Virus record (IMG/VR): IMGVR_UViG_3300024054_000362 | Location: 124,001-188,000 of that record | Length of the DNA stretch: 64,000 nt | Direction: 5' to 3' (one strand) | Shown: positions 23,826 to 64,000 of the stretch, one piece after another | How positions within the stretch are numbered: the first letter of the stretch is position 1 | Layout of the letters: each line of letters opens with the position of its first letter | Made by a program: the position numbers and the translations under genes | The notes under the pieces: generated by a model | The model's input: the letters and a program-made list of their open reading frames with translations, nothing else | What the model was told of the DNA's origin: nothing | Databases searched by the model: none

Positions 23826-24313
23826 AGAGTGGCCGTACATTCAGTCGAGCGGCGCCGATGTCAGCGCCAAGAAGGCGCGCGAGCGTTTCACGTCGCTCGA
23901 AGCCGAACTGGCTGCGGTCGGCGCCAAGATCAACGTGCCGATCCTGATGATCCACGACGAGATTCGTTTCGATGTCGATGTTCCCGAGGGCATGGAGGCG
24001 CAGGTCGCCGCGATCATGGACAAGTACTTCCCGAATCCGACGCTGGGGCTACGCGAGCGCGTCGGTCAGATCATGTCGCAGGTCGGCCCTACTCCGTTGA
24101 CCCTCGATGTCACCCCCAGGCACGGTCAAACGTGGGAGCGTCTTCACCGGTCTGCTCGACACGCTTCGTGGCGGGTTTCCGAAACTGCATCTGTACGTCG
24201 AGAACGTCTTCGAAGACCGTTTCCAGAGCTTCCTCAAGGGCTACGGATTCGTGTTGGTCGACGAGACCTCGTGGCCGCCGTCGTTCATTCTGCCGGCAGG
24301 AGTTCCGTCATGA
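23818..24313 (+). pseudogene. hypothetical gene with apparent one-base frameshift at C5 run 24113-24117
   Basis: Removing one C joins ...LTLDVTP to GTVKRGSVFTGLLDTLRGGFPKLHLYVENVFEDRF..., which ends in an ATGA overlap with the next gene. Confidence 0.5.
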
Positions 24314-24723
24314 GCCTAGAGCACGACGATCGTCACAACCCGCGCGGCTTCGAGAACCCAAACGACGTCGCGCGCATGCACGGCGAACAGTTCTGCGGTG
24401 CCGTCCCCGAAGGCGAGGGTAGTTACCCGCGCCACTGTTTCCACGGCACAGGCGAGAACCTTGCGTGCTGCTGGTGCGGTGACTGCTTCGTCGGCGACAA
24501 CGCACACAGCGTCCACGGCGACAACTTCCACCCATTGACGCCTCGCGAGGTCGAGGTCGTCACGTTGATGGCCGAGGGTCTTTCGAACAAGCTGATCGCC
24601 GAGCGCCTCGACATCAGCGACCACACAGCCAAGTTCCACGTGCGCGCGGTAACCAAGAGGCTCGGGCAACAGACGCGTACGGGTGCAGCTGTCGCTGCGA
24701 TTCGTCGAGGGATCGTTCCATGA
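24310..24723 (+). CDS. LuxR-type HTH regulator with Cys/His-rich N-terminus
   Basis: LTPREVEVVTLMAEGLSNKLIAERLDISDHTAKFHVRAVTKRLG. Confidence 0.88.
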   Translation: MSLEHDDRHNPRGFENPNDVARMHGEQFCGAVPEGEGSYPRHCFHGTGENLACCWCGDCFVGDNAHSVHGDNFHPLTPREVEVVTLMAEGLSNKLIAERLDISDHTAKFHVRAVTKRLGQQTRTGAAVAAIRRGIVP

Positions 24724-27584: not shown

Positions 27585-28516
27585 CCACACTCGAAACGGC
27601 TGTCACGCGAAGCAGAAACCTCCGGCCTCGGACGAAGCAGTTGTACTTGCAACACGTCCGTGCGTTCCTGACCTTCGTTCGCGAAACGAAGGCGGGTACG
27701 GATACTCAGAAGGACATCGCCGAGGTTGCGATCACGGATGCTGACTTCACGCAGGAAGTTGTTGTCGCGTGGTGCGACGACATGCGCAGCCGGAAGATCA
27801 AGCCACAGAGCGTCAACGTCGCGCTCAACGCACTTCGTTACGCGGCAGATCGCGCCGACTGCAAGAAGTTCGTCGACGGTGTCGACCGTCTTCCTGTGCG
27901 ACAACATCGAACGCCTTCACAAGCGAAGGCTGCTCGTGCTCTCACGTGGAGCGAAGGCAAGCGTTTGGTCGCCGCGTGTGACGGGTTGCGAGGCCGGGAT
28001 CTTCGCGACAACGCCATCATCACTCTCGGTTTGCGCACAGGAATGTTGCGTTTTTCGATGTGTCAACTCACGTTCGAGGATATCGAGGACAACTCGTTGA
28101 CCTTCACCAAGAAAGGCGGCGGACGGCACTCGATCGTTCTCGACGCCGTAACCTATGCTGCCTTGCGTGCGTGGATGGACTGGCTGACCGCGCGTGATGA
28201 GGAACAAGGACCCGTGTTTCGTTCTCTCGGACGGCAACGCATCAGCCTCGACGACGACGTGTCGATCGGAGCGCAGCTGACGCCCGACGGGCTATACCGC
28301 GCACTTCAACTACGCGCCAAGGAAGCAGGTCTCGGGGATCTTCGACCACACGTTTTTCGAAAGACGTTTTTGGCATGGGTCAAGCGTGCAGGCGCGAGGC
28401 CACAACAGATCGAGGCAGTGACGGGTCACAAGTCTGACGGTATCGGCGATAGCGACGACGCGGGTGAAGAGGCAGCAAACCTGCTGCTGCCCGATTGGGA
28501 CGGAAACCTCAAGTGA
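27581..28516 (+). CDS. tyrosine recombinase-fold protein, probably catalytically inactive
   Basis: RDNAII...TGMLR, PHVFRKTF, TGHKS; no Tyr after GH. Confidence 0.8.
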   Translation: MTTLETAVTRSRNLRPRTKQLYLQHVRAFLTFVRETKAGTDTQKDIAEVAITDADFTQEVVVAWCDDMRSRKIKPQSVNVALNALRYAADRADCKKFVDGVDRLPVRQHRTPSQAKAARALTWSEGKRLVAACDGLRGRDLRDNAIITLGLRTGMLRFSMCQLTFEDIEDNSLTFTKKGGGRHSIVLDAVTYAALRAWMDWLTARDEEQGPVFRSLGRQRISLDDDVSIGAQLTPDGLYRALQLRAKEAGLGDLRPHVFRKTFLAWVKRAGARPQQIEAVTGHKSDGIGDSDDAGEEAANLLLPDWDGNLK

Positions 28517-41918: not shown

Positions 41919-42506
41919 TCACCCGACGCTTCGAACAGCGGCGCTTCGTGCGAGGCGCAACGCGAGCCAACTGAGTCCGACGACGCTCCCGACTACAACT
42001 AGACCGGCGGCGACCTTTGCACCCGTCGATGACGTCGGCGGCGCGGCTGGCTTCACGAGCGCGAGTTGATCTTTCAACCACTGGTTTGGATCGATCGTGT
42101 TCGGTGGGATGACCCCAAGACGTTGCTTGCGGACCTCCCAGTGCGTGTGCCCAGTGGCCGCGTCGAATTTCGCGAGGAGCGTGCCCTCAAGCACCGTCTG
42201 ACCAGGACGCACCGTGATCGAATTGAAATCGAGATGCGAGAGCAGGTGGAAGAAGCCACTCTTGCCCTGCATTAGTACAACGCCGGGACCGTAGCCGACA
42301 AACGGCGCTGAGTTGCCGTCGGCAACATCGATGACGGTACCGTCCTCGGGTGCGAACACCTGCGGCGCGGTCGCGAACATGTCGACCCCGAAGTGCTGAC
42401 ACGGGAACGTCCCGATGCCGCACGAGCCGTCGGCAGGCGTTTGTCGAACGCACCCGAAGCAACCCGTCCGGTGCGTGTCGAACGGTCCGGTCGGGAAGCG
42501 CGCCAC
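41919..42506 (-). CDS. second M23 family peptidase with C-terminal TM anchor
   Basis: HFGVD, LSHL, GHTHWE, IDPNQWL; KVAAGLVVVGSVVGLSWLALRLAR tail. Confidence 0.85.
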   Translation of the reverse strand: MARFPTGPFDTHRTGCFGCVRQTPADGSCGIGTFPCQHFGVDMFATAPQVFAPEDGTVIDVADGNSAPFVGYGPGVVLMQGKSGFFHLLSHLDFNSITVRPGQTVLEGTLLAKFDAATGHTHWEVRKQRLGVIPPNTIDPNQWLKDQLALVKPAAPPTSSTGAKVAAGLVVVGSVVGLSWLALRLARSAAVRSVG

Positions 42507-42507
42507 G

Positions 42508-43122
42508 TTACGCCGCCCTGCGACGACGCGCCATCACGACGCCGACGGTGATCGAAGCCGCAACGATCGCGCCTGTGATCACGAGTGCGAAGAAGCGCTT
42601 GGGAGGCGATGGCGTCGCATCGGCGAGCATCATCTTCTTGCGCCGGGGGATTACAACCACGCCGACGCGGTCACGGAACTGCCAGCGCTGATCGAATTCG
42701 CGGCGTGAGATCGTGCGACGATTGCCGCGAACGTTCGGGTCCATAACGACCACGTTGGTCGGCTTCACCTTGGTGGCGACGACGAAGTGGCCTTGGCCTG
42801 GACGTGTGAAGCTGCGGATCGCTACGATCACTGGAACATCGCTGTTGGTGTACGACCCCAACTCGTCGATGTTGCTGAAGCGCCGTGTCTGTGCGAAGTA
42901 GTTGCGTCGACGGGCGGCCATCGTGACCTGCCATGCCGTGGAGCCCGCCTTGGGATCGATGCCGATTTCGCGGATCAGAGTCGACTCGTCGACGTGATCG
43001 CCCCAGTGTCCCATCACCGCCTTGAGTGCGGCGGCACCGCACGAGTATGGCTGGATCTGTTGGTAGGGCGCTACCTCACCCAACCCAGCATCACCAAGAC
43101 CTTGGGATTGTAGTGCCAACAT
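42508..43122 (-). CDS. C39 family cysteine peptidase with GLG-containing leader and C-terminal TM anchor
   Basis: QIQPYSCGAAAL (Cys), GHFVV (His), VMDPN (Asp); N-terminal QGLGDAGLG; FALVITGAIVAASITVGVVMARRRR tail. Confidence 0.88.
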   Translation of the reverse strand: MLALQSQGLGDAGLGEVAPYQQIQPYSCGAAALKAVMGHWGDHVDESTLIREIGIDPKAGSTAWQVTMAARRRNYFAQTRRFSNIDELGSYTNSDVPVIVAIRSFTRPGQGHFVVATKVKPTNVVVMDPNVRGNRRTISRREFDQRWQFRDRVGVVVIPRRKKMMLADATPSPPKRFFALVITGAIVAASITVGVVMARRRRAA

Positions 43123-44119: not shown

Positions 44120-44380
44120 TTACCGATGGCGACGGCGACGGGCGATCTTCTTGAGGGCCATCATCTTGCCGCCGCTTCCGACGACCTTGTACGACGTCTT
44201 GCGCCCGCGCTTCAGCGGACAGACGCGGATTTTGCCGACGGGGCAGTAGCGACCTTTGCCCTTGTAGCGGCGGCCACCGATCTTGATGCTGCAGTCGCTG
44301 GCCGTGAACGTTCGGCAGTAGGCCGACTTGCCGTGCCGAGCAGCCGTGAACCGACGACGACGCTTTCTGCGCTTTGCCAT
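44120..44380 (-). CDS. Arg/Lys-rich small protein with Cys (putative core protein)
   Basis: MAKRRKRRRR...RRRRHR. Confidence 0.65.
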   Translation of the reverse strand: MAKRRKRRRRFTAARHGKSAYCRTFTASDCSIKIGGRRYKGKGRYCPVGKIRVCPLKRGRKTSYKVVGSGGKMMALKKIARRRRHR

Positions 44381-44419
44381 ACCCTATCCATACCATCGAT
44401 CGCGCACGGGAAGCGAGTT

Positions 44420-44446
44420 GATCGCGCGAGCGATCGGGGGTACCGT
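44420..44446 (+). promoter_or_regulatory. putative late promoter, palindrome 44420-44435 + GGGGG + TACCGT
   Basis: Upstream of the 44498 operon. Confidence 0.6.
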
Positions 44447-44497
44447 TCAGGCACCTCGCTCGACTTCGTCGAGCCCGGCTACGGCTAGGAGGCGATC

Positions 44498-44848
44498 ATG
44501 GCTCTGGTTCTGAAACGCGAAGGCGCGTCGCCCAATCTTCTGAAGTACAGCGTCGTGGCCGACGCCGAGGGCGGTGAAGTCGTGTTGAGCCGTGATGCCT
44601 TGATTCGAGACACCGTACGCGGACCCTTGCAGACGTACGTCGAACGCGGTGTTCGCGTCGACGATCCCTGCCGCTACCTCCTGTGCAACCCGTCGATGCG
44701 GACTTTCGTGACGCCACGGACGTTCGCGCGAGTTGCTGTCGACGCGGTCACCGAAGGTCCGTCGTCGGCAGTCGCCTTCAAGATCATGGCAGAGCCCAAC
44801 GCGACTGCGATCGTTGCGCTCGAATTTCGACACACACTCGCAGCGTAA
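44498..44848 (+). CDS. beta-rich hypothetical protein (putative structural)
   Basis: AGGAGG RBS; alternating hydrophobic pattern. Confidence 0.65.
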   Translation: MALVLKREGASPNLLKYSVVADAEGGEVVLSRDALIRDTVRGPLQTYVERGVRVDDPCRYLLCNPSMRTFVTPRTFARVAVDAVTEGPSSAVAFKIMAEPNATAIVALEFRHTLAA

Positions 44849-44857
44849 AGGGACCCC

Positions 44858-45250
44858 ATGAGCAAGAACGCAGGACAACTTCTTTGGAACCGCCAACGGA
44901 TCAATCTCCCGGCGGGAACGACGCAAGTCAACACCGGTCTCACCCAGATCAACCGGTCGTTCGAAAGCGAGTCGATCGGCGAACCACCACTCGGTGTGAC
45001 TGCGGCGCCTCCAGGGCCGGCGCCTGGCACGTTGCCGGCATCACGTGTCCAGGTCATCCCGCTCGCTCAGACGGACAAGTGGGCCAACGTCACCCACGGC
45101 GAGCCGTACCTCAACCCGGCGACGAACACGATTTTCGTCGCGTTTCAGAACGCCTCTGAGATTGGCATCACCGATCTCAACGTCCTGTTCTGGTTGCCGC
45201 ACTCGATGATCGGTCCGGGCGACGCCGATACGTACAACCTCGCGGACTAG
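44858..45250 (+). CDS. putative virion protein, paralog of 49175-49570
   Basis: Near-identical blocks GQLLWNRQR, TGLTQ(I/V)NRSFESESIGEPPLGVT, THGEP, GPGDADTYN. Confidence 0.75.
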   Translation: MSKNAGQLLWNRQRINLPAGTTQVNTGLTQINRSFESESIGEPPLGVTAAPPGPAPGTLPASRVQVIPLAQTDKWANVTHGEPYLNPATNTIFVAFQNASEIGITDLNVLFWLPHSMIGPGDADTYNLAD

Positions 45251-45257
45251 TCGGAAC

Positions 45258-45749
45258 ATGCTCCGGCGGTATTGCTGGAACGATCCATCGACGTTCCTCG
45301 ACGCGCTTCGAGGGGAGGTTCTTCGTCGCGCATCACTCACGCCGTCGTTCTTCTCGCACAACGTCGGCGGTTGGCGCTCCGAAGACGATTTTTTCGAATG
45401 GCCGTTGGAGCAGGCGACACAGCTCCGTGTGCGCTTCGCCGAGATCGTCGGTGAGTTACCGTCGACCAAGGACCCTCATACGTACCGGTATCGTGCATGG
45501 GCGATCGTGAACCGCGCAGGTAGTTTCCACCGCAGACACGTCCACGGAGGATCTATCTGGTCGGGCGTCTTCTATGTCGACGCGGGCGGTCATCCGAGTG
45601 CGCGAACACTTTTCGAAATCGAAGGACGAGTCTTTCACATCGATCCAGAATCGGGCCTGATGACGGTGTTTCCGTCGTGCACACCTCACAGCGTAGAACC
45701 TCACCTCGGCGGCGGCGAACGCGTTACGATCGCCTTTGACGCATATTAG
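45258..45749 (+). CDS. putative 2OG-Fe(II) oxygenase
   Basis: WAIVN...HRRHVH...WSGVFYV...FPS.TPHSV...RVTIAF. Confidence 0.85.
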   Translation: MLRRYCWNDPSTFLDALRGEVLRRASLTPSFFSHNVGGWRSEDDFFEWPLEQATQLRVRFAEIVGELPSTKDPHTYRYRAWAIVNRAGSFHRRHVHGGSIWSGVFYVDAGGHPSARTLFEIEGRVFHIDPESGLMTVFPSCTPHSVEPHLGGGERVTIAFDAY

Positions 45750-45758
45750 GAGGCACAC

Positions 45759-45941
45759 ATGTTAGCGATGACGTTTAGTGGTCCGCGTGGCGGACACGGT
45801 GGAGGGCACGGTGGTGGCGGACATGGCGGTGGACACGGCGGTGGCGGTTTCCGTCGCGGCGGCGGTTTTCGTCGCGGCGGTGGATGGTGGCCCAACTACT
45901 ACGGCTACGGTCCTGAGGTTGTAGTCCTCCCGCCCGTATAG
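45759..45941 (+). CDS. small Gly/His/Arg-rich protein (possible readthrough to 46052)
   Basis: AGGAGG RBS; GGGH and GGGFRR repeats. Confidence 0.6.
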   Translation: MLAMTFSGPRGGHGGGHGGGGHGGGHGGGGFRRGGGFRRGGGWWPNYYGYGPEVVVLPPV

Positions 45942-46038
45942 ACGGACTGTCAGTTCACGATCCGAATGCCGACCGGTGAGCAGATCATCGTGGTTGGTCC
46001 GTGTCCGACGGCGCTGACCCAACCCGTCAACGCGTTGA

Positions 46039-46728
46039 TCACGCCGCGCTGAGCGTTGTCAGCCGGCGTGCCGCGATCAACCAATCGGTGGCTTCATCCG
46101 GGATGGCTGTGTGTTCGGCGTGCGAGAGCGTGCGCCACGACGGTGGTACGTATCGTCGAGGGCTGGTGTTGTTGACGTGCGTCGATGCGATCAGGAAGGT
46201 CCGTGCAGGCATCGCTGGGCGTTCACGGTGTGCGTTGCACCAGAGGACGTCTTCGCCCGAGTCGACGTCATCGAAGGGATGCTTGTGCCAGAGGTCACGT
46301 AGGTATAGGAGCGACGCACCAACAGCTCCGGGAAGCTCGGCCGAATATGTGTACTGCCAGTAGTCGCCGGTTCGCAGGTCGAAGAACGGAAGTGTCCGTA
46401 GTCCTGAAACTGCGACACCGCCCGCACGAAGGACGCCAACCTGCTCTTGAAGTCGCCACGGTGCGTACCAATCGTCGTCATCCCAGTGCGCCACGATGGT
46501 GCCGCGAGCGTGCGTGAGCCCGAGGTTGCGTTTGGCGCCGAGTCTGAGGCCGTCTGTTTCGATGAACCGGATGCGTTCGTCGTTTGGCAGCAGTGACGCG
46601 ATTGGTCGTGGTCCGACGACGATCAGCTCACGATTGTCGTAGGTCTGTGCCTGCCAGCAGCGGAGCGTGAGAGGAATCCAGAGGGCGCGCCGAACGGTCG
46701 TCGGCATGATCGCACTTACGAGTGTCAT
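46039..46728 (-). CDS. family 2 glycosyltransferase
   Basis: VSAIMPT...QTYDNRELIVV...GAKRN...AHWDDDDWY. Confidence 0.88.
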   Translation of the reverse strand: MTLVSAIMPTTVRRALWIPLTLRCWQAQTYDNRELIVVGPRPIASLLPNDERIRFIETDGLRLGAKRNLGLTHARGTIVAHWDDDDWYAPWRLQEQVGVLRAGGVAVSGLRTLPFFDLRTGDYWQYTYSAELPGAVGASLLYLRDLWHKHPFDDVDSGEDVLWCNAHRERPAMPARTFLIASTHVNNTSPRRYVPPSWRTLSHAEHTAIPDEATDWLIAARRLTTLSAA

Positions 46729-46767
46729 CGTTGAAATCGGCGGTGAGGATCTTCATCATACCGTTCG

Positions 46768-47418
46768 ATGCAGGTGATCGTCAGCATGACGTCGATTCCG
46801 GCGCGCAACGGCCGACTCGCGTCGACGCTCGCCTCGTTGCAATCACAGACACGGCTGCCAGACGAGATTCGGCTCTACCTCGGGCCTGGATGTGCGCTCG
46901 TCGCAGACGTGACGTGCGTCGATGTTGAAGATCGCGGGCCGATCACCAAGTTGTCAGCGGTCGTGGATCCAGAAATTCCTGACGACGCGTTGATTGTTAC
47001 CGTCGACGACGACATCCTCTACGAACCGACTTGGCTGGAGACGTTGGTGGCTGCCGCTGAAGCGTCGCCGGGAGCGGTAGTTGGACGTTCGGGCTGGTTG
47101 GTTGCAGACTTCCTGCGTAGCGAGCATCACGGCTACTTCATCTGGGCGCAGGAAGACACGTGCGACGTCCTAGAAGGCTGGGCGGGCGTTGCCTATCGCA
47201 AGAGCTTCTTCGACGGATCCGTACTCGAACCGCCGCCGGAGTTTCGACTTGTCGATGACGTTTGGATCTCTGGTTACCTCTATCGGCGTGGTATCGAACG
47301 TCGCATCGTTCGTCCACCGATGGCCATCCCCGATCCGAAGGGTCTGCCGGGTCTTCACAACAGGTCTGACTTCGTCAAACTCAACCGCAAAGCCGCACGG
47401 ATCGCCTTCGCACCATGA
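46768..47418 (+). CDS. GT-A glycosyltransferase-like protein
   Basis: IVSMTSIPAR...DRGPITKL...VTVDDDILY. Confidence 0.8.
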   Translation: MQVIVSMTSIPARNGRLASTLASLQSQTRLPDEIRLYLGPGCALVADVTCVDVEDRGPITKLSAVVDPEIPDDALIVTVDDDILYEPTWLETLVAAAEASPGAVVGRSGWLVADFLRSEHHGYFIWAQEDTCDVLEGWAGVAYRKSFFDGSVLEPPPEFRLVDDVWISGYLYRRGIERRIVRPPMAIPDPKGLPGLHNRSDFVKLNRKAARIAFAP

Positions 47419-48626
47419 ACCCTATCAAGCTGTCCATCTGCATCAGTTCGCTCAACAGTCGGCACGCAACGTTGCACCGTCTCGTACGGCAGCTCCAGAC
47501 ACAACCACGTAGCGACGAGATCGAGATCCTGATCGCTGCCGACGAGCGACGACATCCCACCGGTGCCAAGCGCAATCGGTTGGTGGCTTCTGCCGTTGGT
47601 GCCTACGTCGTTCACATCGACGACGATGACATGGTTGCGGTCGACTACGTCCCCAAGGTACTTGCTGCGATCGATGCGAATCGTGGCGTCGACGTCATCC
47701 TGCTTCGCGGTCGCCGTACGCATGTGGGTGGAGCTGCAGTCGTGTTCGACTATCGGCTCGGCGGTGAAGAAGGCGAAGTCGACAAGAACGGCGTCCTCTG
47801 GCGCAACCCGGCCCATTTGTGTCCCATCCGTGCGGACATCGCCAAGTCGGTTCCGTTTGAGGAGATCTGGTTCGCTGAAGATGTTCGTTGGCTCGAACAG
47901 GTCAAGCCTCTTCTCAAGACCGCTGCGCGCGCAGGCACACCTAACGAAGTGCTCTACAACTACCTATGGGAACCTAACAAGGACGTCTATATCTCCATGG
48001 TCACCGATCCGAAAGCCCCCAAGCCCGTCATGAAGATCGGCGGCGTCGTCATCGCAAACCCGGCAGCGACCGTCGACGTTTCCGATCACGAGTGCATCTT
48101 CGCGCCACAGTACGTCGAGCGATCAGGACCCGGCTCGACGGTCGAATTCAGTGCGCCGTACCGCGAGTTTCTGCGCAACTTCATCCGCGATCTGAAGATC
48201 CGTTCGATCGTCGATCTCGGCTGCGGTGACATGACCATCATGTCGAACGTCGACATGAACGACGCGCAATACCTAGGACTCGACGTCATTCCCGAACGCA
48301 TCAAGCGCAACCGCGTGAAGTGTCCGCAGCTGGCTTTCGAGCATCGCGACATTCACAAGGGGCCGTTCCCGGCTGCGGACCTCTTCATTTGCAAGGATGT
48401 CGTCCAACACTGGTCGAACGAGGACATCCAAGGCTGGCTCGTCGATCTGCGAAGGGCACACTTTCGCTTCGCGCTCGTTACAAACTGCAACTACGGGCCG
48501 ACGGTCAACACCAAGATCGCGACCGGCGGCTGGCGTGCAATCGACTTGACCAAATCGCCGTTCTCCGTCGGCGAAGTCGTCTTCACCTGGGGCAACAAGG
48601 ATGTCGTCCTACTGCGAGGCATGTGA
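47415..48626 (+). CDS. GT2 glycosyltransferase fused to a class I SAM methyltransferase
   Basis: GAKRNRL...VHIDDDD; SGPGS...IVDLGCGD...KDVVQHW. Confidence 0.85.
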   Translation: MNPIKLSICISSLNSRHATLHRLVRQLQTQPRSDEIEILIAADERRHPTGAKRNRLVASAVGAYVVHIDDDDMVAVDYVPKVLAAIDANRGVDVILLRGRRTHVGGAAVVFDYRLGGEEGEVDKNGVLWRNPAHLCPIRADIAKSVPFEEIWFAEDVRWLEQVKPLLKTAARAGTPNEVLYNYLWEPNKDVYISMVTDPKAPKPVMKIGGVVIANPAATVDVSDHECIFAPQYVERSGPGSTVEFSAPYREFLRNFIRDLKIRSIVDLGCGDMTIMSNVDMNDAQYLGLDVIPERIKRNRVKCPQLAFEHRDIHKGPFPAADLFICKDVVQHWSNEDIQGWLVDLRRAHFRFALVTNCNYGPTVNTKIATGGWRAIDLTKSPFSVGEVVFTWGNKDVVLLRGM

Positions 48627-49174
48627 TGCATCTCCACGAAATTCTCACTGCCGAGTTCAACCGTTTCGGCAACGCACCGCTCAACATCATCGAGACCGGT
48701 ACGATTCGCGGCGACAGTGAGGCGTCTCGCCTCGGTGACGGCTGGTCGACGCTCTGGTTCGCAGAGCGTCGTGCGCGATGCGGCGGTGAGCTGCTCTCGA
48801 TCGACCTGGACGTGTCGACGGCGGCAACGGTGCTCGCCGAGCACGGCGTCGCGGATGGCGTCGAACTGGAACAAGGCCACAGCATCGATCGTCTGGCGTT
48901 CCGTTGCCGTCGAGGTCGACGATGGGACGTCATCCTTCTCGACAGCGACAACGACGCACAGCTCATCCTGCACGAGTTTCTGATCGCGCAGCACCTCGTC
49001 ACCGATGGCGGTCTCGTCATGATCGATGACGTCCGTATGCCGAACCAACCGATCGGCGCCCTCAAGGGCGATCAGGTATGGCCCTACATCAAGAAGCGCG
49101 GTCTCGCGCATCACATCGTAGAGCGTGAAGGCTGGAACGGTTATCGCACGGGCGTACTCACCGTCCAGCTGTGA
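48626..49174 (+). CDS. class I SAM-dependent methyltransferase (Methyltransf_24-like)
   Basis: IIETGT...WST...SIDLD...ILLDS...GGLVMIDD. Confidence 0.8.
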   Translation: MHLHEILTAEFNRFGNAPLNIIETGTIRGDSEASRLGDGWSTLWFAERRARCGGELLSIDLDVSTAATVLAEHGVADGVELEQGHSIDRLAFRCRRGRRWDVILLDSDNDAQLILHEFLIAQHLVTDGGLVMIDDVRMPNQPIGALKGDQVWPYIKKRGLAHHIVEREGWNGYRTGVLTVQL

Positions 49175-49570
49175 CTACTGGCCGGGGTTGTACGTGTCCG
49201 CGTCGCCGGGTCCCACGATCGAGTGTGGATCCCAGAAGAGCACGTTCGGTGTCACTGTCACCGGTGGCGAGCTGGTGTTGGTGAACGTGACCTTTACGGT
49301 GTTGGTCGCTGGGTCGACGAACGGCTCGCCGTGGGTGATGCCTGTCCAGTCCGATAGCGGCGCCATCGGGATCACCTGGATACGCGACGCCGGAAGGGTA
49401 CCGTCGGCAGGTCCCGGTGGTGCCACTGTCACACCGAGAGGCGGTTCGCCGATCGACTCGCTCTCGAACGACCTGTTGACCTGGGTGAGACCGGTGTCGA
49501 TGGTCGTCACGCCGCCCGCCAGCGTCATGCGCTGACGATTCCAGAGAAGCTGTCCTGCCTTCTTGCTCAT
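49175..49570 (-). CDS. putative virion protein, paralog of 44858-45250
   Basis: Direct alignment with the paralog; AGGAG RBS. Confidence 0.75.
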   Translation of the reverse strand: MSKKAGQLLWNRQRMTLAGGVTTIDTGLTQVNRSFESESIGEPPLGVTVAPPGPADGTLPASRIQVIPMAPLSDWTGITHGEPFVDPATNTVKVTFTNTSSPPVTVTPNVLFWDPHSIVGPGDADTYNPGQ

Positions 49571-49623
49571 GGTTTCTCCTGTGCCGTAGCCGGATCCCGC
49601 AAAATGCGGGACGAGGTTCCATG

Positions 49624-49650
49624 AAGCTACACCCGATCGCGCGAGCGATC
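49624..49650 (-). promoter_or_regulatory. putative late promoter, palindrome 49635-49650 + GGGTG + TAGCTT; 5' UTR hairpin at 49595-49611
   Basis: Seen directly in the sequence. Confidence 0.65.
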
Positions 49651-50332
49651 AACGCCGCCTACGATAACGTCGACCTACGCCCGCGCTGCCGTGCCGCTTG
49701 GCGCGCCAACGGGACACGCCATACACGATTCCGGCACCGAGCCCAGCAAGCACAACGGCCGCGCCGGCTCCGACGAGGATCGGATGGTCGAGGGCGAACT
49801 GGGCCGCCGGATGCTTGTTGAGGAAGATCGCTGTGTCGAGGACAGGAATCAGCTTATCGACGCCGGAGCCCGTCGAAGTAGCTGGCGCAGAACCGTCAGC
49901 GGGTACGGGTGCCTTGGCAGCTTCTTGCGCCTTCAAGGTCTGAAGGCGTTCGATCACCTGTGGAAGTGCAGGGTCCTGTGCGATCTGAAGAATCGTGTCG
50001 AGGTGCGGTCCGGCTTGCGTGAGGATCTGTTGGAGCTTCGCAAGCAGCTCGGGAGCCTGCTGCACGATGGCGGCGATGTCGCTGGTGATGTCGCCAAGGC
50101 CGTTCGACATGAAAGGCAGCCGCGCAAGGCGGGACTGCAAATCGAAATCGTCATCGGTCGACCACACCGTCGGCCAGTTCTTGGGCTGACCTGGGATCGC
50201 GCCGACGCCGGCAAGGCCGGGGGGTTGCGGGATGAAATGGAAGACGCGACCAGCGCGTGCGATCGCGTCTTCTTGCGCATCGGTCGAGAGCACTCGCACG
50301 GAGCCGCCAAGCTGATGTTGAAGTGCGAGCAC
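49649..50332 (-). CDS. putative virion membrane protein (internal NGLG, C-terminal TM, GVG-RRYRRRR tail)
   Basis: LVGAGAAVVLAGLGAGIVYGV hydrophobic helix. Confidence 0.7.
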   Translation of the reverse strand: MLALQHQLGGSVRVLSTDAQEDAIARAGRVFHFIPQPPGLAGVGAIPGQPKNWPTVWSTDDDFDLQSRLARLPFMSNGLGDITSDIAAIVQQAPELLAKLQQILTQAGPHLDTILQIAQDPALPQVIERLQTLKAQEAAKAPVPADGSAPATSTGSGVDKLIPVLDTAIFLNKHPAAQFALDHPILVGAGAAVVLAGLGAGIVYGVSRWRAKRHGSAGVGRRYRRRR

Positions 50333-50338
50333 GGTCCA

Positions 50339-50365
50339 AGCCTATCATCGATCGCGCGAGCGATC
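50339..50365 (-). promoter_or_regulatory. putative late promoter, palindrome 50350-50365 + GATGA + TAGGCT
   Basis: GTG start 6 nt after the -10 box. Confidence 0.7.
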
Positions 50366-50418: not shown

Positions 50419-51000
50419 ATGACGATCGAATCTCTCATCGTTGCGATCCTTGCCATCACGGGCACAGCAGCGCCGCACACGTCCAAGAATGCGCGCGTGC
50501 ACGCAGAGAGCGCACAGGCAGTCGCCACCGTCGATTTCCCGGTCGAAGTTCTCCTCGGTACGGCCTACGTCGAATCGCGCTTCTATCAGACGGCGCTGAG
50601 TCGGTTGGAGGATTGTACGGATCCGAAGGATCCTAAAACCTGCATTCGAAAGACCGGCGTGTGGGCCAGCCATGTACCGCCGCCGACGGCGCGACCGGAC
50701 TGGTACTGTGGGCCGCTACAGACGGGCGGCTGGGTCACGTGGGCCGAGTGTCAGCGGATGCGGACGGACGTGCTGTACGGTTACCAGCAGGGCGTGCGCG
50801 AGCTGACGAAGTGGTGGAACGATCCGAGCTGTTCGCGACTACCGGATGACGATCGGCTGCGTTGTACGCTTGCCGGACACAACGCCGGGTATGCAGGTGC
50901 GGCGAACTACAAGGTCTCGCCGTACGTTCGTGACGTGTTCAAGGCGCGCGATCGGATCGTGAAGATCACCGAGCACGAAGAGTTGAAGCCGGGTAGCTAG
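50419..51000 (+). CDS. lytic transglycosylase (SLT-like) with N-terminal hydrophobic signal
   Basis: AYVESRF (catalytic Glu), GPLQ, AGHNAG, YVRDV. Confidence 0.7.
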   Translation: MTIESLIVAILAITGTAAPHTSKNARVHAESAQAVATVDFPVEVLLGTAYVESRFYQTALSRLEDCTDPKDPKTCIRKTGVWASHVPPPTARPDWYCGPLQTGGWVTWAECQRMRTDVLYGYQQGVRELTKWWNDPSCSRLPDDDRLRCTLAGHNAGYAGAANYKVSPYVRDVFKARDRIVKITEHEELKPGS

Positions 51001-51326
51001 CGGCGCTTCTTGCGGCGGCTCTTGCGCTTGCGCGAGCGGCCGAGATTCGTGGGACAGAGACTGCCGTGGTAGAGCAGCGTGCCGGCAGGGTATCCACGGT
51101 TTTGCCGAGTCTGATTCCGCTCGGTGTACCAGTCGACGACCTTACGGTTCGTCGAGGACGAACACGGCACGTAGCATTGGATGTCGCCGCGCTGGCTCGG
51201 CTTCCCCGACGCCATCGCGACGTCGACGCACTCGCGCGTACTGAGGCCGTGGCGCTGCGCGGCGCGGCGCGCGCTTTTCATTGGGCCCTTGACGATCAAC
51301 GAGACGCTGTTCGCACGTGTCGCCAC
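50997..51326 (-). CDS. Cys-containing basic protein with LG-Arg tail, paralog of the C-terminal half of 53831-54346
   Basis: VSLIVKGPMKS...CV...DIQCYVPC...W...GTLLYHG. Confidence 0.7.
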   Translation of the reverse strand: MATRANSVSLIVKGPMKSARRAAQRHGLSTRECVDVAMASGKPSQRGDIQCYVPCSSSTNRKVVDWYTERNQTRQNRGYPAGTLLYHGSLCPTNLGRSRKRKSRRKKRR

Positions 51327-51328
51327 GG

Positions 51329-51766
51329 TTAGCGTCCTGCGGTGCGGTTCTTGGTGCGGCCCGCGTAGCGGTAGAGCGCGACGCCGAACACTGCGAGCGC
51401 ACCACCGACGGCGAGCGCGCCACCGGCGACGAGCATGTTCGAAACCGTCGGGCTCTGGTTCGCGAGGAACGAGTCGATGCCGCCGAACTGACGTCGGTAG
51501 GGGATCACGGTCTGGCCTCCGTTGATGGACGTGAAGTAGCTGGGGTCGCAGTAGTCGCAGACAGGTCCGCGTGCGGGGTAGCGGCGGCGGTACATCTGCG
51601 GCGTGCCGCCGGGGCCGTAGACCGGTGTCGCGACGCGGGTCGGTCCGACGATGGCCTGATGTGGCGCGAGCGGCTGACCAGCCGATGGAAAAGACACCGT
51701 GGGCTCGTCGCGCAGCCCTGCGAGCTGCGCGTCACTGAGACCTTCCAAGGTGAATACGTGGGGCAC
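51329..51766 (-). CDS. Pro/Tyr-rich protein with C-terminal TM anchor
   Basis: MLVAGGALAVGGALAVFGVALYRY + basic tail; AAGGAG RBS. Confidence 0.65.
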   Translation of the reverse strand: MPHVFTLEGLSDAQLAGLRDEPTVSFPSAGQPLAPHQAIVGPTRVATPVYGPGGTPQMYRRRYPARGPVCDYCDPSYFTSINGGQTVIPYRRQFGGIDSFLANQSPTVSNMLVAGGALAVGGALAVFGVALYRYAGRTKNRTAGR

Positions 51767-51814: not shown

Positions 51815-52348
51815 TTACTTACGTCGCCGCCCCCGTAGTGGCATGTCGGGCGGGAAATCGAACTTGCCGGTCGCGGCCCACGTGCCACAGGCGGCGTTTG
51901 CCTTGGCGACCGCATCCATGGGCGAGTCGACGTCGACGCGCACACCGGGCTGCTTGTCCGTGGTGCAGAAGCGCAAGAACGGTTGGCCCTTGTCGAATGC
52001 AAGTTGAACTGGGCAACCCTTGCGCTTGAGCGCACCTGCGCACGGCTTGGGACAGGGGCGTGGCTTTATCTTGCCCTTGTGCTTGCCCTTCTTGACTTCG
52101 TACTGGCCACACGACTTCCCGTCGACGGAATCGACGCTCTTGCTCGTCGAACGGAAGCTGCGGTTGAGGTCGAACTGCGTGACGGCAACGCGGCTCTCGC
52201 CAACGATCGTACACGCATTGGCGTCGACCTGTCCCGTTCGACCTGACTTGGCGCCGACAACGACACGAAGACAAGGCACGCTTGACGTGTCTGGCTTTGG
52301 CTTCTTGATCTTCTTGGGCTTGGTCGTGGTCGTTTGGGATTTCGCCAT
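51815..52348 (-). CDS. Lys/Cys-rich basic protein with RG-RRRK tail
   Basis: Composition; operon packing. Confidence 0.65.
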   Translation of the reverse strand: MAKSQTTTTKPKKIKKPKPDTSSVPCLRVVVGAKSGRTGQVDANACTIVGESRVAVTQFDLNRSFRSTSKSVDSVDGKSCGQYEVKKGKHKGKIKPRPCPKPCAGALKRKGCPVQLAFDKGQPFLRFCTTDKQPGVRVDVDSPMDAVAKANAACGTWAATGKFDFPPDMPLRGRRRK

Positions 52349-61079: not shown

Positions 61080-64000
61080 TCAGTTGACTTCCGCCCAAGT
61101 TTTTCCGGCCTTGGCGTCGACGGGAAAATTCATCTTGTTGCCGTTGTACTCGACCTCGCGCGTGAAGCACTTCACGACGAGGGCCTTGAGCAGATCCTGA
61201 TCGTCTTCGTCGCACTCGAAGACTACGGCATCGTGGATCTGAAGGATCGGCCACGCGCCCTCGGGCAGGAGCGGCATGATATCCGCGAGCCCCAGGTTGA
61301 TAAGGTCAGCGCCCGACGCCTGAATCGGGAAGTTGACGACTTCGGTCAGGTCGAACTGCTTGATCGGAAAACATCGACGACGTCCGAGGATCATGCTTCG
61401 GATCTCGCCTTGCTGATCCGCCATCCGTTGCATGTCCTGGTGCCACTTGGTGACGCCCGGCATGCGGGTCTTCATCACCTGCACCATCTTGCCGATCATG
61501 CCGATGGTGACCTGCGGGTAGTCGCGGACGACGGCCTTCCACAACGTCTCGATCGAGCCGGCGTAGAACGCGCCGTACTCCGGGCGCTTGATCAGGTCGC
61601 GGCGGACCTTGCGTTCGTCGACAGGAACCGTGTCGAAGTCCGGCCAGACGATGCGCGCGAACTCGCTATGGATGTCCTTGTCCTTGTGGAAGATGTCGAG
61701 GAGGAACGGGTCACCTGACATGAGCGCGATCAGGCGTGCTTCGAGTTGCTTCGCATCGAAAGCGACGAACGCACGCCCGTACGGTGCGACCACCTGGCTA
61801 CGGAGGTTGGGGCGTCCCTTCTTTTTGTCGGCCTTGGGCCAGTTCTGTGCTTGTGGTCCTTCGGAGCGCCATCGTCCAGTGATGGCGTGGACGCTCCATC
61901 GTGGGTGAACACGCAGCCACGGATCGGCGAAGCCGTAACGGATCTTGCCGGGGATCGGTCGGCCTTCCTTGTCGAGGACCGGGCGATCGAGCATGCGTTC
62001 ACAGAACGTCGACAGGAGCTTTGCGTTCTCGCGGTAGTTGAGGAGCGCTTGGATTTCCGGGTACTGCGAGAACGCTTCGAGGACGTCTTTCTTTGTCGAG
62101 ATTCGACCACTGGCCGTCTGAAGACTGAGCGGCACACCGCAGGCCTTGAGGAAGGCCACGATGTGATCGCCCGAGTCGATCATGAAGTTGAACTTGCTAG
62201 CCTCGATCTCGCCGAGGCGTTTCGAAATACGTTCGTCAAGATCGATCGGATCGTGCTTTCGCGTACGCCGCGCCTGTTCGAAGGCGAGCCGTTCCTTGAA
62301 GCGCGCCAGGATCGTCGGATCCTGAATTTTGTCGTCCAGCTCTTTTTTGGCCGCATCGATGTTGGCGCGGAAGCCTTTGCGGAGTTGCCCGTTGATTTCT
62401 GGATCGATCGGGACGCCCTTCATGTGCATCACGCTGGCGGCGTGCGCCATCGCGAGATCCACCTTGTAGGTCTTCTCGGCGTTCGACTCCTTGATGATGA
62501 GCGCGATCGGACCTTCGATACGTGCCGTCGCAAGCGTGTCGCGTGCGTTGTAGGGCAGCAGCTCGTCGAGCGTTCCTTGACCATGGCGGTATTCGGCCTT
62601 CCACGGCGGAGCGGCGTAGAACTGCGTCAGGACACGCTGAAGGTTGTGTGCGAGGCCTGGGAACGCACTGTGATGCATGAGCATCGTGCAGTGGATTTCG
62701 CCGTTGATCTGAAAACCGTGACGTTCCAAGACAGGTACGTCGTAGATCCGGTTGTGGAAGATCTTGACGACGGACTCGTCGGCGAACAGTTTGTCGAGCG
62801 GTTCGAGAACCTCCGGGATGCACAGCTCCCACGCGATGCTGATCGCGCGCTCGAACGTGGCGAGCCCGAGCGCCGACATGTTGGCGTTGTAAGGTGAGAG
62901 CGCGGTGTGTTGCTTCGTGTTTTCGACGAAGGTCTCGGTGTCACACGCGAACCGACCTGAACGGTATGCGTCGACGACGAAGTCGGCGACGAGCTTCTTC
63001 GCCCGCTGCCAATCTTCTAGTTCGACCTGAATGTCGTCGGTGAACTTGATGTCGGCGCCCTGCGAGATCAGGTTCACCTTGGCCGTGTCGTAGAGCAGGT
63101 TCCAGAAGGCGAGGTCGACCGTGTGTGACCCACCACCGCCACTCGCACCGCCGCCACGAAGGATCGCAGCGGGGTGAATGCTCGGGATCACCGCACGCGT
63201 CCGTCCGCTGTTGTCGCAGTCGACCTCGTGGTACGAGCCCGCCATCTGCGTGATCGAGAACTTCTCGTTGCCAGTGAGTTGTTGGGCGGCGTGAGCCCCG
63301 AGGGCGAGGACGGGCACGCCGGGGAACTGTGCGATCTCTTGTTTGAGTCGGTCGCCACAAGCTTGACGTGCTTGCTTCTTGATGGCGTCGGAGGCGCCGT
63401 GCGGCGGTTGGCAGTTGTGAACGACGGCTCCGGGCGTGAGGAAGTTGTGCGTGCCTTCCACTTCGAGGCAGTACACGGTCGCGCCTTCGCCTTTTCGTCG
63501 GGGGCTCGTACAGACGCTCTCGGCCTGATCGTAAAAGGCCGCTGCTGGAATGGGCTCGTATGTTTGCGGGTCGTACTTGCCGCGATCTTCAGGTCGAAGT
63601 TTGTACGCCATCACAGGTGGAACGTAAGTCGCGATCGCAGCACTGAATCGCGCAGTCCCTTCGACCGTGAATCGGATACGGCCGCGCCGAACGCGGTTTT
63701 CGAAACCGCGTGCACGTAGTACTGCAGAGGCGTGAAGAAGATCTGGTTCGGGAAAGGCGACGCCACAAATCTCGGCGAGCGGACGGTGCCCGTTGCGGAT
63801 CTGCATGTACCCATCGTCTAGGTACCAGACGGCAAACAACAGCTCGTCCGCCGAAGCGAGAACAGTCGATGGGATTCGTTTCTTGCCTTCGGGGTAGAAG
63901 AGGTCGCGTGTTGCATGTCCCCATGCACCGGCAGCTGTACGGAACCCGTACTTAGCTTGCTCATTTTGTCGGGGTGGCTGTTGGAACAGTGACACGCCGA
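61080..64000 (-). CDS. polA: family A DNA polymerase with N-terminal UDG-like domain, intein-containing, 5' truncated
   Basis: CQPP...LALG...IHPAAILR (UDG-like); DTET exonuclease; DAKQLEAR, RDLIKRPEYG, QIHDAV polymerase motifs; frame open at the window edge. Confidence 0.93.
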   Translation of the reverse strand, partial: GVSLFQQPPRQNEQAKYGFRTAAGAWGHATRDLFYPEGKKRIPSTVLASADELLFAVWYLDDGYMQIRNGHRPLAEICGVAFPEPDLLHASAVLRARGFENRVRRGRIRFTVEGTARFSAAIATYVPPVMAYKLRPEDRGKYDPQTYEPIPAAAFYDQAESVCTSPRRKGEGATVYCLEVEGTHNFLTPGAVVHNCQPPHGASDAIKKQARQACGDRLKQEIAQFPGVPVLALGAHAAQQLTGNEKFSITQMAGSYHEVDCDNSGRTRAVIPSIHPAAILRGGGASGGGGSHTVDLAFWNLLYDTAKVNLISQGADIKFTDDIQVELEDWQRAKKLVADFVVDAYRSGRFACDTETFVENTKQHTALSPYNANMSALGLATFERAISIAWELCIPEVLEPLDKLFADESVVKIFHNRIYDVPVLERHGFQINGEIHCTMLMHHSAFPGLAHNLQRVLTQFYAAPPWKAEYRHGQGTLDELLPYNARDTLATARIEGPIALIIKESNAEKTYKVDLAMAHAASVMHMKGVPIDPEINGQLRKGFRANIDAAKKELDDKIQDPTILARFKERLAFEQARRTRKHDPIDLDERISKRLGEIEASKFNFMIDSGDHIVAFLKACGVPLSLQTASGRISTKKDVLEAFSQYPEIQALLNYRENAKLLSTFCERMLDRPVLDKEGRPIPGKIRYGFADPWLRVHPRWSVHAITGRWRSEGPQAQNWPKADKKKGRPNLRSQVVAPYGRAFVAFDAKQLEARLIALMSGDPFLLDIFHKDKDIHSEFARIVWPDFDTVPVDERKVRRDLIKRPEYGAFYAGSIETLWKAVVRDYPQVTIGMIGKMVQVMKTRMPGVTKWHQDMQRMADQQGEIRSMILGRRRCFPIKQFDLTEVVNFPIQASGADLINLGLADIMPLLPEGAWPILQIHDAVVFECDEDDQDLLKALVVKCFTREVEYNGNKMNFPVDAKAGKTWAEVN
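63414..64000 (-). mobile_element. intein with LAGLIDADG endonuclease domain (C-terminal part)
   Basis: AVWYLDDG block; VYCLEVEGTHNFLTPGAVVHN|C splice junction, Cys+1 at 63411-63413. Confidence 0.92.

What the first reader, a model, noticed from the sequence alone, without database searches (positions are those of the whole stretch)
44420..49650. Glycosylation/methylation cassette bracketed by convergent paralogous structural genes, each behind a late promoter
Seen: two highly similar 130-aa genes (44858 + and 49175 -) point inward, each downstream of a palindrome promoter. Between them lie a 2OG-Fe(II) oxygenase, three GT-A glycosyltransferases (one fused to a methyltransferase) and a methyltransferase. 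Inferred: a virion-surface glycan modification island, as in chloroviruses and mimiviruses, with the duplicated protein as a possible substrate. The inverted homology could also allow inversion or exchange of the cassette.
Basis: partly seen in the sequence, partly recalled or inferred. Interest (0 to 1): 0.6.

Follow-up and report, generated by a model that had tools for sequence, protein, structure and literature searches.

The report
Jumbo-phage protein glycosylation island
An uncultured 221-kb lake phage has gathered a hydroxylase, three sugar transferases and two methyltransferases between two copies of a small, previously undescribed protein. These small proteins are the likeliest targets of the enzymes, which would make this a new variant of the rare phage habit of sugar-coating its own proteins.

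Summary
The sequence observation holds. Two 130/131-aa paralogs (70% identical) face each other across a 2OG-Fe(II) oxygenase, three GT-A glycosyltransferases (one fused to a SAM methyltransferase), a second methyltransferase and a 60-aa Gly-rich ORF. The host genome is a 221-kb uncultured lake jumbo phage.

The palindrome GATCGC-N4-GCGATC, with a -10-like TAnnnT and a hairpin leader, is real, genome-wide and conserved upstream of this family in related phages. On the left it drives a 116-aa gene, with paralog A second in the operon. "Late" and "structural" are unproven.

The small proteins form a small, unnamed, phage-only family of 116 representative clusters, with 1-4 copies per genome. In 19 of 47 related loci a family member lies next to a modifying enzyme, in varied arrangements. 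The enzyme is an oxygenase homolog in 7 loci, a GT2 in 10, a methyltransferase in 1 and a mannosyltransferase in 1. The domain also occurs fused N-terminally to Ice-binding-like, Kelch/TIG, PKD and ConA-like domains.

The fused GT is homologous to mycobacteriophage GTs, including Omega gp16, which lies beside the major head gene.

Best reading: a protein hydroxylation/glycosylation/methylation island with the paralogs as acceptors. Inversion is not supported: the arms share only 77% DNA identity, and every assembly has the same orientation.

The parts
44417..44497 (+). Left regulatory leader. It holds the palindrome GATCGC-GCGA-GCGATC (44420-44435), a -10-like TAnnnT 5 nt downstream, a short hairpin, the conserved CCGGCTACGGC box and an AGGAG ribosome-binding site.
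   Evidence: The motif matches exactly. The leader aligns with those upstream of family members in four related phages, and its hairpin keeps pairing through a few two-sided changes.
44498..44848 (+). p116: a 116-aa protein of unknown function, first gene of the left operon. It is a conserved backbone gene in relatives (67-73% identity).
   Evidence: No Pfam or PHROG family matches.
44858..45250 (+). Paralog A: a 130-aa small beta-sandwich protein of an unnamed phage family, and the proposed acceptor protein.
   Evidence: It is 70% identical to paralog B. The family has 94 clusters by word search and 116 representatives by profile search. AF2 model: pLDDT 79, all-beta.
45258..45749 (+). 2OG-Fe(II) oxygenase (PF13759), 163 aa. 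The invariant residues H94, H96, H144 and R155 are retained.
   Evidence: Its near relatives are few, and several lie on the same contigs as family members.
45759..45941 (+). A 60-aa His/Gly/Arg-rich ORF, last gene of the left operon. Function unknown.
   Evidence: Called as a gene in all assemblies. No family matches.
46039..46728 (-). GT229: a GT2 (GT-A) glycosyltransferase transcribed leftwards from the 39-nt divergent gap at 46729-46767.
   Evidence: PF00535 at 45.7 bits. Homologs (27-46% identity) lie next to family members in 10 related loci.
46768..47418 (+). GT216: a GT-A fold glycosyltransferase, first gene of a three-gene enzyme operon.
   Evidence: AF2 pLDDT 96; Foldseek to KfiA E 5e-11. 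There are 69 homolog clusters, some carrying PF00535.
47415..48626 (+). GTMT403: an N-terminal GT2 domain (about residues 3-190) fused to a class I SAM methyltransferase domain (about residues 236-385).
   Evidence: The GT domain is 32-35% identical to Che9d gp109 and Omega gp16.
48626..49174 (+). MT182: a Methyltransf_24 SAM methyltransferase with a weak match to the rhamnosyl O-methyltransferase/CmcI family.
   Evidence: The GT216-GTMT-MT24 block is conserved as a unit in L083 and L084.
49175..49570 (-). Paralog B: 131 aa. It converges on MT182 with no intergenic base.
   Evidence: It sits downstream of p227, where relatives carry their third family copy.
49571..49653 (-). Right regulatory leader. 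It has the palindrome (49635-49650) and the same -10-like, hairpin, CCGGCTACGGC and AGGAG architecture as the left one.
   Evidence: (repeat I4).
49649..50332 (-). p227: a tail-anchored membrane protein and backbone gene upstream of paralog B. It has its own palindrome at 50350-50365, shared with the divergent transglycosylase-like gene at 50419-51000.

Best explanation
The island is a phage-encoded protein-modification pathway, and its most likely acceptors are the two small beta-sandwich paralogs that flank it.

Shown:
- Four transcription units. Unit 1 is palindrome leader > p116 > paralog A > oxygenase > Gly-rich ORF. Unit 2 is GT229. Unit 3 is GT216 > GT-MT fusion > MT182. Unit 4 is palindrome leader > paralog B.
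- All enzymes keep their family hallmarks.
- The island combines three modules that occur separately in relatives: paralog + oxygenase, paralog + GT229-like GT, and the GT216-GTMT-MT24 block.

Inferred:
- The oxygenase hydroxylates a residue of the small protein. Candidates are the X-Pro-Gly sites in the proline-rich loop or the invariant C-terminal G-P-G.
- The three GT-A enzymes build a short glycan on it, and the two methyltransferases O-methylate sugars.
- The modified proteins are displayed on the virion surface, where the small domain acts as an anchoring module.
- The palindrome with its -10-like element gives the paralogs a shared, probably non-early, high-expression control. Two of the three enzyme operons lack this control.
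For: Association. In 19 of 47 dereplicated related loci, a family member is directly next to a modifying enzyme. The enzyme is an oxygenase homolog in 7 loci, placed before, after or between copies. It is a GT229-like GT2 in 10 loci, convergent or co-directional. It is a Methyltransf_11 overlapping the stop codon in L048, and a Mannosyl_trans3 GT one gene away in L069. Four unrelated enzyme classes in varied arrangements argue for selection rather than inherited synteny.

The oxygenase subfamily is tiny (9 clusters), and several members lie on contigs that also carry family members.

Homology. The fused GT domain is homologous to mycobacteriophage GTs. Omega gp16 lies directly after the major head protein and is followed by a methyltransferase. 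Che9d gp109-111 is a three-GT operon. Glycans on the capsid and tail tube of mycobacteriophages are reported in Freeman et al. 2023, as cited in PMC12619734.

Surface role. The domain is N-terminal in fusions with Ice-binding-like, Kelch +/- TIG, DUF2935 and PKD/LVIVD domains; a partial match also lies inside a protein with a ConA-like lectin domain. The family is multi-copy with variable loops and conserved termini. Weak fold resemblance, Z 4-5, is to tail-fibre and tailspike distal domains.

Substrate type. The methyltransferases are small-molecule/sugar types, not DNA methyltransferases. No thymidylate-synthase-like or TET/JBP gene was found in the genome.
Against: No direct evidence of modification exists. 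The enzyme-substrate complex prediction gave no verdict.

In L083 and L084 the GT216-GTMT-MT24 block lies elsewhere, beside a homolog of an 866-aa protein and away from any family member. At least that block may therefore serve another target.

About half of the related loci show no adjacent enzyme. These include phages with three tandem copies, such as L016 and L010.

The fold of the small protein matches nothing convincingly. No structural gene of this phage could be identified to anchor the 'virion' claim. The neighbourhood holds lysis-type and membrane proteins, not recognised head or tail genes.
Confidence: 0.45

Rival explanations
1. The enzymes glycosylate other virion proteins (capsid, tail or the 866-aa protein family), as in mycobacteriophages. 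They lie next to the small paralogs only because this stretch is a plasticity zone where accessory genes accumulate.
For: The GT216-GTMT-MT24 block sits beside the 806-812-aa homolog of the 866-aa gene in L083 and L084, not near family members. Omega gp16 and gp17 follow the major head gene. The region differs in content between close relatives: the GT is present in L015 and absent in L010.
Against: This does not explain why four different enzyme classes recur immediately beside family members in many rearranged contexts. It also does not explain why the small oxygenase subfamily is largely confined to contigs carrying the family.
Confidence: 0.25
2. The island modifies host envelope glycans (LPS, capsule, wall polymers) during infection, for exclusion or lysis control. 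The small proteins are then glycan-binding or envelope-acting factors rather than acceptors.
For: The surroundings encode a transglycosylase-like protein, two M23 peptidases, a GDSL lipase, a C39-like peptidase and several tail-anchored membrane proteins. GH25 lysozymes lie next to family members in L009 and L045. The best structural matches of GT216 are polysaccharide synthases.
Against: The GTs and the paralogs have no signal peptide or membrane segment. No flippase or lipid-carrier enzyme is present in the island. A 2OG oxygenase tightly coupled to the small protein is not expected for envelope glycan synthesis.
Confidence: 0.12
3. The island hypermodifies phage DNA: base oxidation, then glycosylation and methylation, to evade restriction.
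For: Phage GTs that glycosylate DNA are known (Pyle et al. 2024, as cited in PMC12619734). The oxygenase gives a weak PHROG hit to a nucleic-acid enzyme family. A nucleoside deoxyribosyltransferase-like gene lies 1 kb upstream.
Against: The oxygenase belongs to PF13759, not TET/JBP. The methyltransferases are not DNA methyltransferase families. No thymidylate-synthase/dCMP-hydroxymethylase-like gene is present. No TET/JBP match was found, although that control did not ring anywhere.
Confidence: 0.05
4. The inverted paralogs act as recombination arms, so the cassette flips or is exchanged as a switch.
For: The arms form an inverted repeat of about 390 nt plus 42 nt of leader. A tyrosine-recombinase-like gene lies 17 kb away.
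Against: The arms are only 76-78% identical with short exact runs. The paralogs belong to different subclades, so the duplication is old and not homogenised. Three full-length assemblies, three further contigs and contigs from four lake metagenomes all share one orientation. Flipping would not change which genes are expressed.
Confidence: 0.03

Closest known systems
Mycobacteriophage virion glycosylation operons (Che8-type cluster F GT operons such as Che9d gp109-111; Omega gp16 GT + gp17 methyltransferase after the major head gene)
   Same: The GT domain is homologous to that of the GT-MT fusion: 32-35% identity, E 1e-15 to 1e-22. Both have several GT genes in one operon. Omega has a methyltransferase next to the GT, and its operon sits beside the gene of a virion protein. 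Both involve cytoplasmic glycosylation of phage proteins.
   Different: No oxygenase is annotated in the stretches of those operons examined here. The acceptors reported there are the capsid and tail-tube C-termini (Freeman et al. 2023, as cited in PMC12619734), not a dedicated small protein family. The hosts are actinobacteria and the genomes are 55-110 kb. Here the host is unknown and the genome is 221 kb. Homology covers only one GT domain; MT182 and the fusion's methyltransferase domain gave no hit to the Omega or Che9d loci.
Chlorovirus PBCV-1 A064R (GT-GT-methyltransferase) and the Vp54 capsid glycan machinery
   Same: A virus-encoded GT is fused to a sugar O-methyltransferase, and several virus-encoded GT-A enzymes act without host glycosylation machinery (PMC7826918).
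   Different: That is a eukaryotic giant virus making N-linked glycans on the major capsid protein. No sequence homology was tested or claimed here. A064R has two GT domains; the fusion here has one.
Hydroxylation-primed O-glycosylation (Skp1 prolyl hydroxylase + GTs in Dictyostelium/Toxoplasma; plant hydroxyproline-rich glycoproteins). From my own knowledge, not tested.
   Same: A 2OG-Fe(II) oxygenase gene is coupled to GT genes and to a small acceptor protein. The long-loop paralogs carry X-Pro-Gly motifs.
   Different: The oxygenase here belongs to PF13759, not the P4H family; PF13640 scores only 19.5 bits against a cut-off of 27. The hydroxylated residue, if there is one, is unknown.
Bacterial flagellin and pilin glycosylation islands (Campylobacter, Pseudomonas). 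From my own knowledge.
   Same: Genes for glycan synthesis, transfer and methylation are clustered directly beside duplicated genes of the surface protein they modify.
   Different: Those are cellular systems with unrelated acceptor proteins, and they include nucleotide-sugar biosynthesis genes that are absent here.

Membership tests
GT-A fold / GT2 glycosyltransferases | Profile match to PF00535 above the curated cut-off | tested here: met
   GT229 scores 45.7 bits and the GT-MT fusion 26.6 bits, against a cut-off of 23.3. GT216 scores only 20.2 bits, below the cut-off.
GT-A fold / GT2 glycosyltransferases | GT-A Rossmann-like fold (tested for GT216, the sub-threshold member) | tested here: met
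   AF2 pLDDT 96.2. Foldseek hits KfiA at E 5e-11 (TM 0.68-0.70), and also heparosan synthase, SpsA and ppGalNAc-T2.
GT-A fold / GT2 glycosyltransferases | DxD-type metal and nucleotide-sugar binding motif | tested here: met
   Runs of three or four Asp lie at the expected position in all three proteins. D80, D81 and D82 are invariant in the GT216 family.
2OG-Fe(II) oxygenase (PF13759) | Full-length profile match plus conserved metal and 2OG ligands | tested here: met
   61.7 bits against a cut-off of 27, covering profile positions 2-101 of 101. H94, H96, H144 and R155 are invariant in 10 homologs. Their assignment as ligands is by analogy only.
Class I SAM methyltransferases | Profile match above the cut-off and a Gly-rich SAM motif | tested here: met
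   The fusion hits Methyltransf_25 at 31.1 bits (cut-off 27). MT182 hits Methyltransf_24 at 39.6 bits (cut-off 26.3). Both sequences show a DLGCG-type or ETGT-type motif.
Phage virion glycosylation system (mycobacteriophage type) | Homology of a GT to those phages' GTs | tested here: met
   tblastn E 2e-22 to Omega gp16 and 5e-21 to Che9d gp109, for the GT domain only.
Phage virion glycosylation system (mycobacteriophage type) | Glycan demonstrably attached to a virion protein | not testable with these tools
   This needs mass spectrometry or glycostaining of virions. No isolate exists; there is no relative in the phage collection.
Phage virion glycosylation system (mycobacteriophage type) | The acceptor is a virion structural protein | tested here: inconclusive
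   The paralogs have no family and no convincing fold match. Fusions to adhesin-type domains suggest surface display. Capsid, portal and sheath genes were not found.
Late promoter class | The motif lies upstream of late (structural or lysis) genes and not of early genes | tested here: inconclusive
   Exact copies lie mostly in intergenic DNA, typically 14-110 nt before start codons, and most are followed by TAnnnT. The motif precedes a transglycosylase-like gene and is rare in the 180-221 kb replication arm. Most target genes are ORFans. No expression data are available: no RNA run holds the phage.
Invertible DNA segment | Both orientations are present in populations, with near-identical inverted repeats or recombinase sites | tested here: not met
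   Only one orientation is seen in all assemblies and contigs. The arms are 77% identical. Contigs cannot exclude rare variants.

The most novel reading that the evidence does not exclude
A hydroxylation-primed O-glycosylation system in a bacterial virus. A PF13759 oxygenase hydroxylates a proline or other residue of a new family of small virion-anchor proteins. Phage GT-A enzymes then glycosylate that residue, and methyltransferases cap the sugars. This would give jumbo phages of lakes a tunable, methylated glycan coat carried on dedicated decoration proteins. It would also assign a first substrate class to the large phage and cyanophage PF13759 oxygenase family.
Probability: 0.15. Interest if true: 0.8.

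Novelty: new variant of a known kind. Interest (0 to 1): 0.5.

Why it matters
Phage-encoded glycosylation of phage proteins is known from only a few actinophages and from giant algal viruses. This locus would extend it to uncultured freshwater jumbo phages. It would add an oxygenase step and tie the pathway to a dedicated, multi-copy acceptor family that also serves as the N-terminal module of adhesin-like fusion proteins. It gives a directly testable substrate hypothesis for the PF13759 2OG oxygenases, which to my knowledge have no assigned substrate. It also provides a compact six-gene set that can be tested by co-expression and mass spectrometry without culturing the phage. The conserved palindrome, -10-like element and hairpin leader also define a regulon of about 30 transcription units in an otherwise unannotatable genome.

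Tried and rejected
- Complex prediction of oxygenase with paralog A gave no verdict (score 0.00, controls not run). It counts neither for nor against binding.
- Fold of the small protein: Foldseek against PDB and BFVD found nothing at E <= 0.001. VIA-align wide gave a best Z of 4.8, to generic beta-sandwich tips of tail fibres and tailspikes. The ESM Atlas gave only unnamed clusters.
- Pfam and PHROG scans of both paralogs, p116 and p227 found no family.
- Isolated-phage relatives: none by DNA, by paralog B or by the GP88-like neighbour.
- Locating the structural module failed. PHROG and Pfam scans of 40 large or motif-driven proteins found replication, RNR, primase, vWA-partner ATPase and HNH proteins and a terminase-like nuclease, but no capsid, portal or tail gene. 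Genome scans with PF05065, PF04984 and PF04860 were negative. GP88 (PF17338) has no known function.
- Rosetta-stone search for fusions of the paralog domain to an oxygenase, GT or methyltransferase found none among 20 long family members.
- Canonical sigma-70 promoters and intrinsic terminators in 43.6-50.5 kb are not above chance.
- Inversion: no alternative joint appears in contigs of four runs. The single reported 'joint' is a 21-nt match to an unrelated high-depth contig.
- RNA evidence: no RNA run holds the stretch.
- An HxE...H metal site in the paralog was considered and dropped, because H80 is not conserved across the wider family.
- Read laying was given 5,501 letters.

Full report
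**Setting.** The window is bases 124,001-188,000 of a 221,422-bp IMG/VR virus record that CheckV rates as complete. GC content is 61%. Nearly identical genomes of about 221.5 kb were assembled independently from several lake-water metagenomes. No isolated phage is related at the DNA level. None is related through paralog B or the GP88-like neighbour either. The right arm of the genome (180-221 kb) encodes DNA polymerase A, helicases, primases, ribonucleotide reductase and a terminase-like nuclease. Capsid, portal and sheath genes could not be recognised by any profile.

**The observation.** Three sources agree on the gene models: ORF listing, my codon-usage gene caller and the database gene calls.
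- On the + strand, a 116-aa gene (44498-44848) is followed at gaps of 7-9 nt by three genes. These are paralog A (44858-45250), a PF13759 2OG-Fe(II) oxygenase (45258-45749) and a 60-aa His/Gly/Arg-rich ORF (45759-45941).
- GT229 (46039-46728, - strand) and GT216 (46768-47418, + strand) diverge from a 39-nt gap.
- GT216 overlaps the GT-methyltransferase fusion (47415-48626). The fusion in turn overlaps MT182 (48626-49174).
- Paralog B (49175-49570, - strand) abuts MT182 tail to tail.

The paralogs are 70% identical (E 1e-66) and are the only two copies in the genome. Pfam supports every enzyme assignment except GT216, which scores 20.2 bits against a cut-off of 23.3. I therefore modelled GT216 from 33 homologs (pLDDT 96). 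The model is an unambiguous GT-A fold, with KfiA as best match at E 5e-11. The additions are p116 and the Gly-rich ORF.

**The palindrome.** GATCGC-N4-GCGATC occurs 43 times in the genome at up to two mismatches to the commonest form. Of 65 copies with perfect or one-off arms, the exact ones lie mostly in intergenic DNA, typically 14-110 nt upstream of a start codon. They often sit in divergent gaps. When oriented toward the downstream gene, most copies are followed after 4-14 nt by a TG-n-TAnnnT-like element, that is, an extended -10.

Upstream of the small-protein genes this is part of a longer conserved leader: palindrome, TAnnnT, a hairpin, a CCGGCTACGGC box and AGGAG. The leader aligns across four related phages and both window copies. 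A few two-sided changes keep the hairpin paired.

The element is therefore real and promoter- or operator-like. The palindrome probably binds a dimeric regulator beside a -10-only promoter, and a sigma-like protein is encoded at 23818-24723.

"Late" is not shown. The motif is rare in the replication arm and precedes a transglycosylase-like gene and membrane proteins. However, most of its target genes are ORFans, and no RNA data exist. In the window the left leader drives p116, with paralog A second in the operon. GT229 and the GT216 operon have no palindrome.

**The small proteins.**
- The family has no Pfam or PHROG model.
- A word search found 94 clusters. A full profile search of 1.84 billion representatives found only 116.
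- Every contig I examined looks phage-like.
- AF2 gives an all-beta sandwich (pLDDT 79) with flexible termini and a proline-rich loop. Fold searches return only weak matches (Z <= 4.8) to distal domains of tail fibres and tailspikes.
- The termini are conserved. The loops vary, and a 13-residue proline-rich insertion is present in one major clade and absent in another.
- Genomes carry one to four copies, usually in tandem. They sit in a conserved backbone: GP88 > p177 > p145 > copies > transglycosylase on the other strand > p227 > copy > p116.
- In other phage-like contigs the domain is the N-terminal module of longer proteins. Their C-terminal parts are Ice-binding-like beta-solenoids, Kelch propellers with or without TIG, DUF2935, or PKD/LVIVD; a partial match also lies inside a protein with a ConA-like lectin domain.
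- A conserved small N-terminal module plus interchangeable adhesin-type domains is the layout of phage fibres and decoration proteins. This is the best, though indirect, support for surface display.

**Association with modifying enzymes.** Among 47 dereplicated related loci, many of them short, 19 have a modifying enzyme directly beside a family member.
- In 7 loci it is a homolog of the window's oxygenase, placed after, before or between copies.
- In 10 loci it is a GT229-like GT2, either convergent or upstream and co-directional.
- In L048 it is a Methyltransf_11 gene overlapping the stop codon.
- In L069 a Mannosyl_trans3 GT lies one gene beyond four tandem copies.

The oxygenase subfamily has only nine clusters, and several share contigs with family members. 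Near-identical relatives differ by presence (L015) or absence (L010) of the GT. Four unrelated enzyme classes recurring beside one small protein family, in varied arrangements, is the signature of an enzyme-substrate relationship.

The window's island unites three modules that are separate elsewhere. These are paralog + oxygenase (as in L009), paralog + GT229-type GT (as in L033 and L036) and the GT216 > GT-MT > MT24 block. In L083 and L084 that block is intact but sits beside a homolog of the 866-aa protein, far from any family member. This last point is the main caveat: the block may act on another protein.

**Comparison with known systems.**
- The GT domain of the fusion is 32-35% identical to mycobacteriophage and Gordonia phage glycosyltransferases.
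- In Omega the homolog gp16 follows the major head protein gene and precedes a methyltransferase gene. In Che9d the homolog gp109 heads a three-GT operon.
- Glycans on mycobacteriophage capsid and tail-tube subunits are documented in Freeman et al. 2023, as cited in PMC12619734.
- The GT-methyltransferase fusion parallels PBCV-1 A064R, which has two rhamnosyltransferase domains plus a 2-O-methyltransferase (PMC7826918).
- The oxygenase has no counterpart in the Che9d and Omega stretches examined here. From my own knowledge, the nearest functional analogue is hydroxylation-primed glycosylation of Skp1 or of plant hydroxyproline-rich proteins. The oxygenase here is PF13759, not a P4H-family enzyme.

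**Rivals.**
- DNA hypermodification is unlikely. The methyltransferases are not DNA methyltransferases, the oxygenase is not TET/JBP, and no thymidylate-synthase-like gene exists. The TET/JBP search was also negative, but its control did not ring anywhere.
- Host-envelope modification is possible, given the lysis-type and membrane genes nearby. It lacks the expected membrane or lipid-carrier components.
- The invertible-cassette idea fails. The arms are 76-78% identical. The paralogs fall in different subclades whose members sit in tandem elsewhere. Three complete assemblies, three further contigs and contigs of four lake runs from 2018 and 2025 all share the window's orientation, without a single base difference across 44.3-49.8 kb. 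Contigs cannot exclude rare variants.

**Verdict.** The interpretation as a glycan-modification island with the paralogs as likely substrate is supported by comparative context but remains unproven. "Structural" and "late" are plausible but untested labels. The inversion idea is not supported. This is a new variant of a known kind: phage self-glycosylation, here with an added oxygenase and a dedicated, previously undescribed acceptor family.

Noticed in passing
window 45759-45941 (+): A 60-aa ORF made of GGHGGG and RGG repeats with an aromatic C-terminus. It is the last gene of the p116-paralog A-oxygenase operon and is called in all assemblies. The extra contig depth here comes from unrelated GC-rich repeats.
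   Followed up: partly
window 41919-43122 (-), 49649-50332 (-), 51329-51766 (-): Four proteins around the island end in a single C-terminal membrane helix (tail-anchored): an M23 peptidase, a C39-like peptidase, p227 and p145. This is an unusual concentration for a phage.
   Followed up: no
window 44120-44380 (-), 50997-51326 (-), 51815-52348 (-): Extremely basic small proteins rich in Arg/Lys, some also rich in Cys (p86, p109, p177). They could be DNA-condensing or internal virion proteins.
   Followed up: no
window 61080-63995 (-), continuing beyond the window: The DNA polymerase A gene (1,229 aa) carries LAGLIDADG/intein and UDG-like segments at its N-terminal end.
   Followed up: no
window 23818-24723 (+) and 27641-28516 (+): A sigma-factor-like protein, which could read the TAnnnT promoters, and a tyrosine-recombinase-like protein.
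   Followed up: no
window 44300-49800: Contigs from lake metagenomes dated 2018 and 2025 are letter-identical to the window across the whole island. This indicates a very stable phage population.
   Followed up: partly
L010 12006-12719 versus L015 10407-11834: Two near-identical relatives differ by the presence (L015) or absence (L010) of a GT229-like gene between the third family copy and p116. The GT is an accessory gene that varies between close relatives.
   Followed up: partly
L083 7001-9612 and L084 7001-9912: The GT216 > GT-MT > Methyltransf_24 block is conserved as a unit (53-67% identity) at a different genome position. It lies next to a homolog of the 866-aa ORFan (genome 34314-36914), which is itself preceded by the palindrome.
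   Followed up: partly
genome G000 19779-20105 (-), outside the window: A fourth, sub-threshold GT2-like segment lies inside a 672-aa gene.
   Followed up: no
genome G000 76608-78917 (+), outside the window: A 769-aa protein is 33-34% identical over its full length to the vWA-domain protein of Ackermannviridae and Aeromonas phages. This is one of the few links to cultured phages.
   Followed up: no
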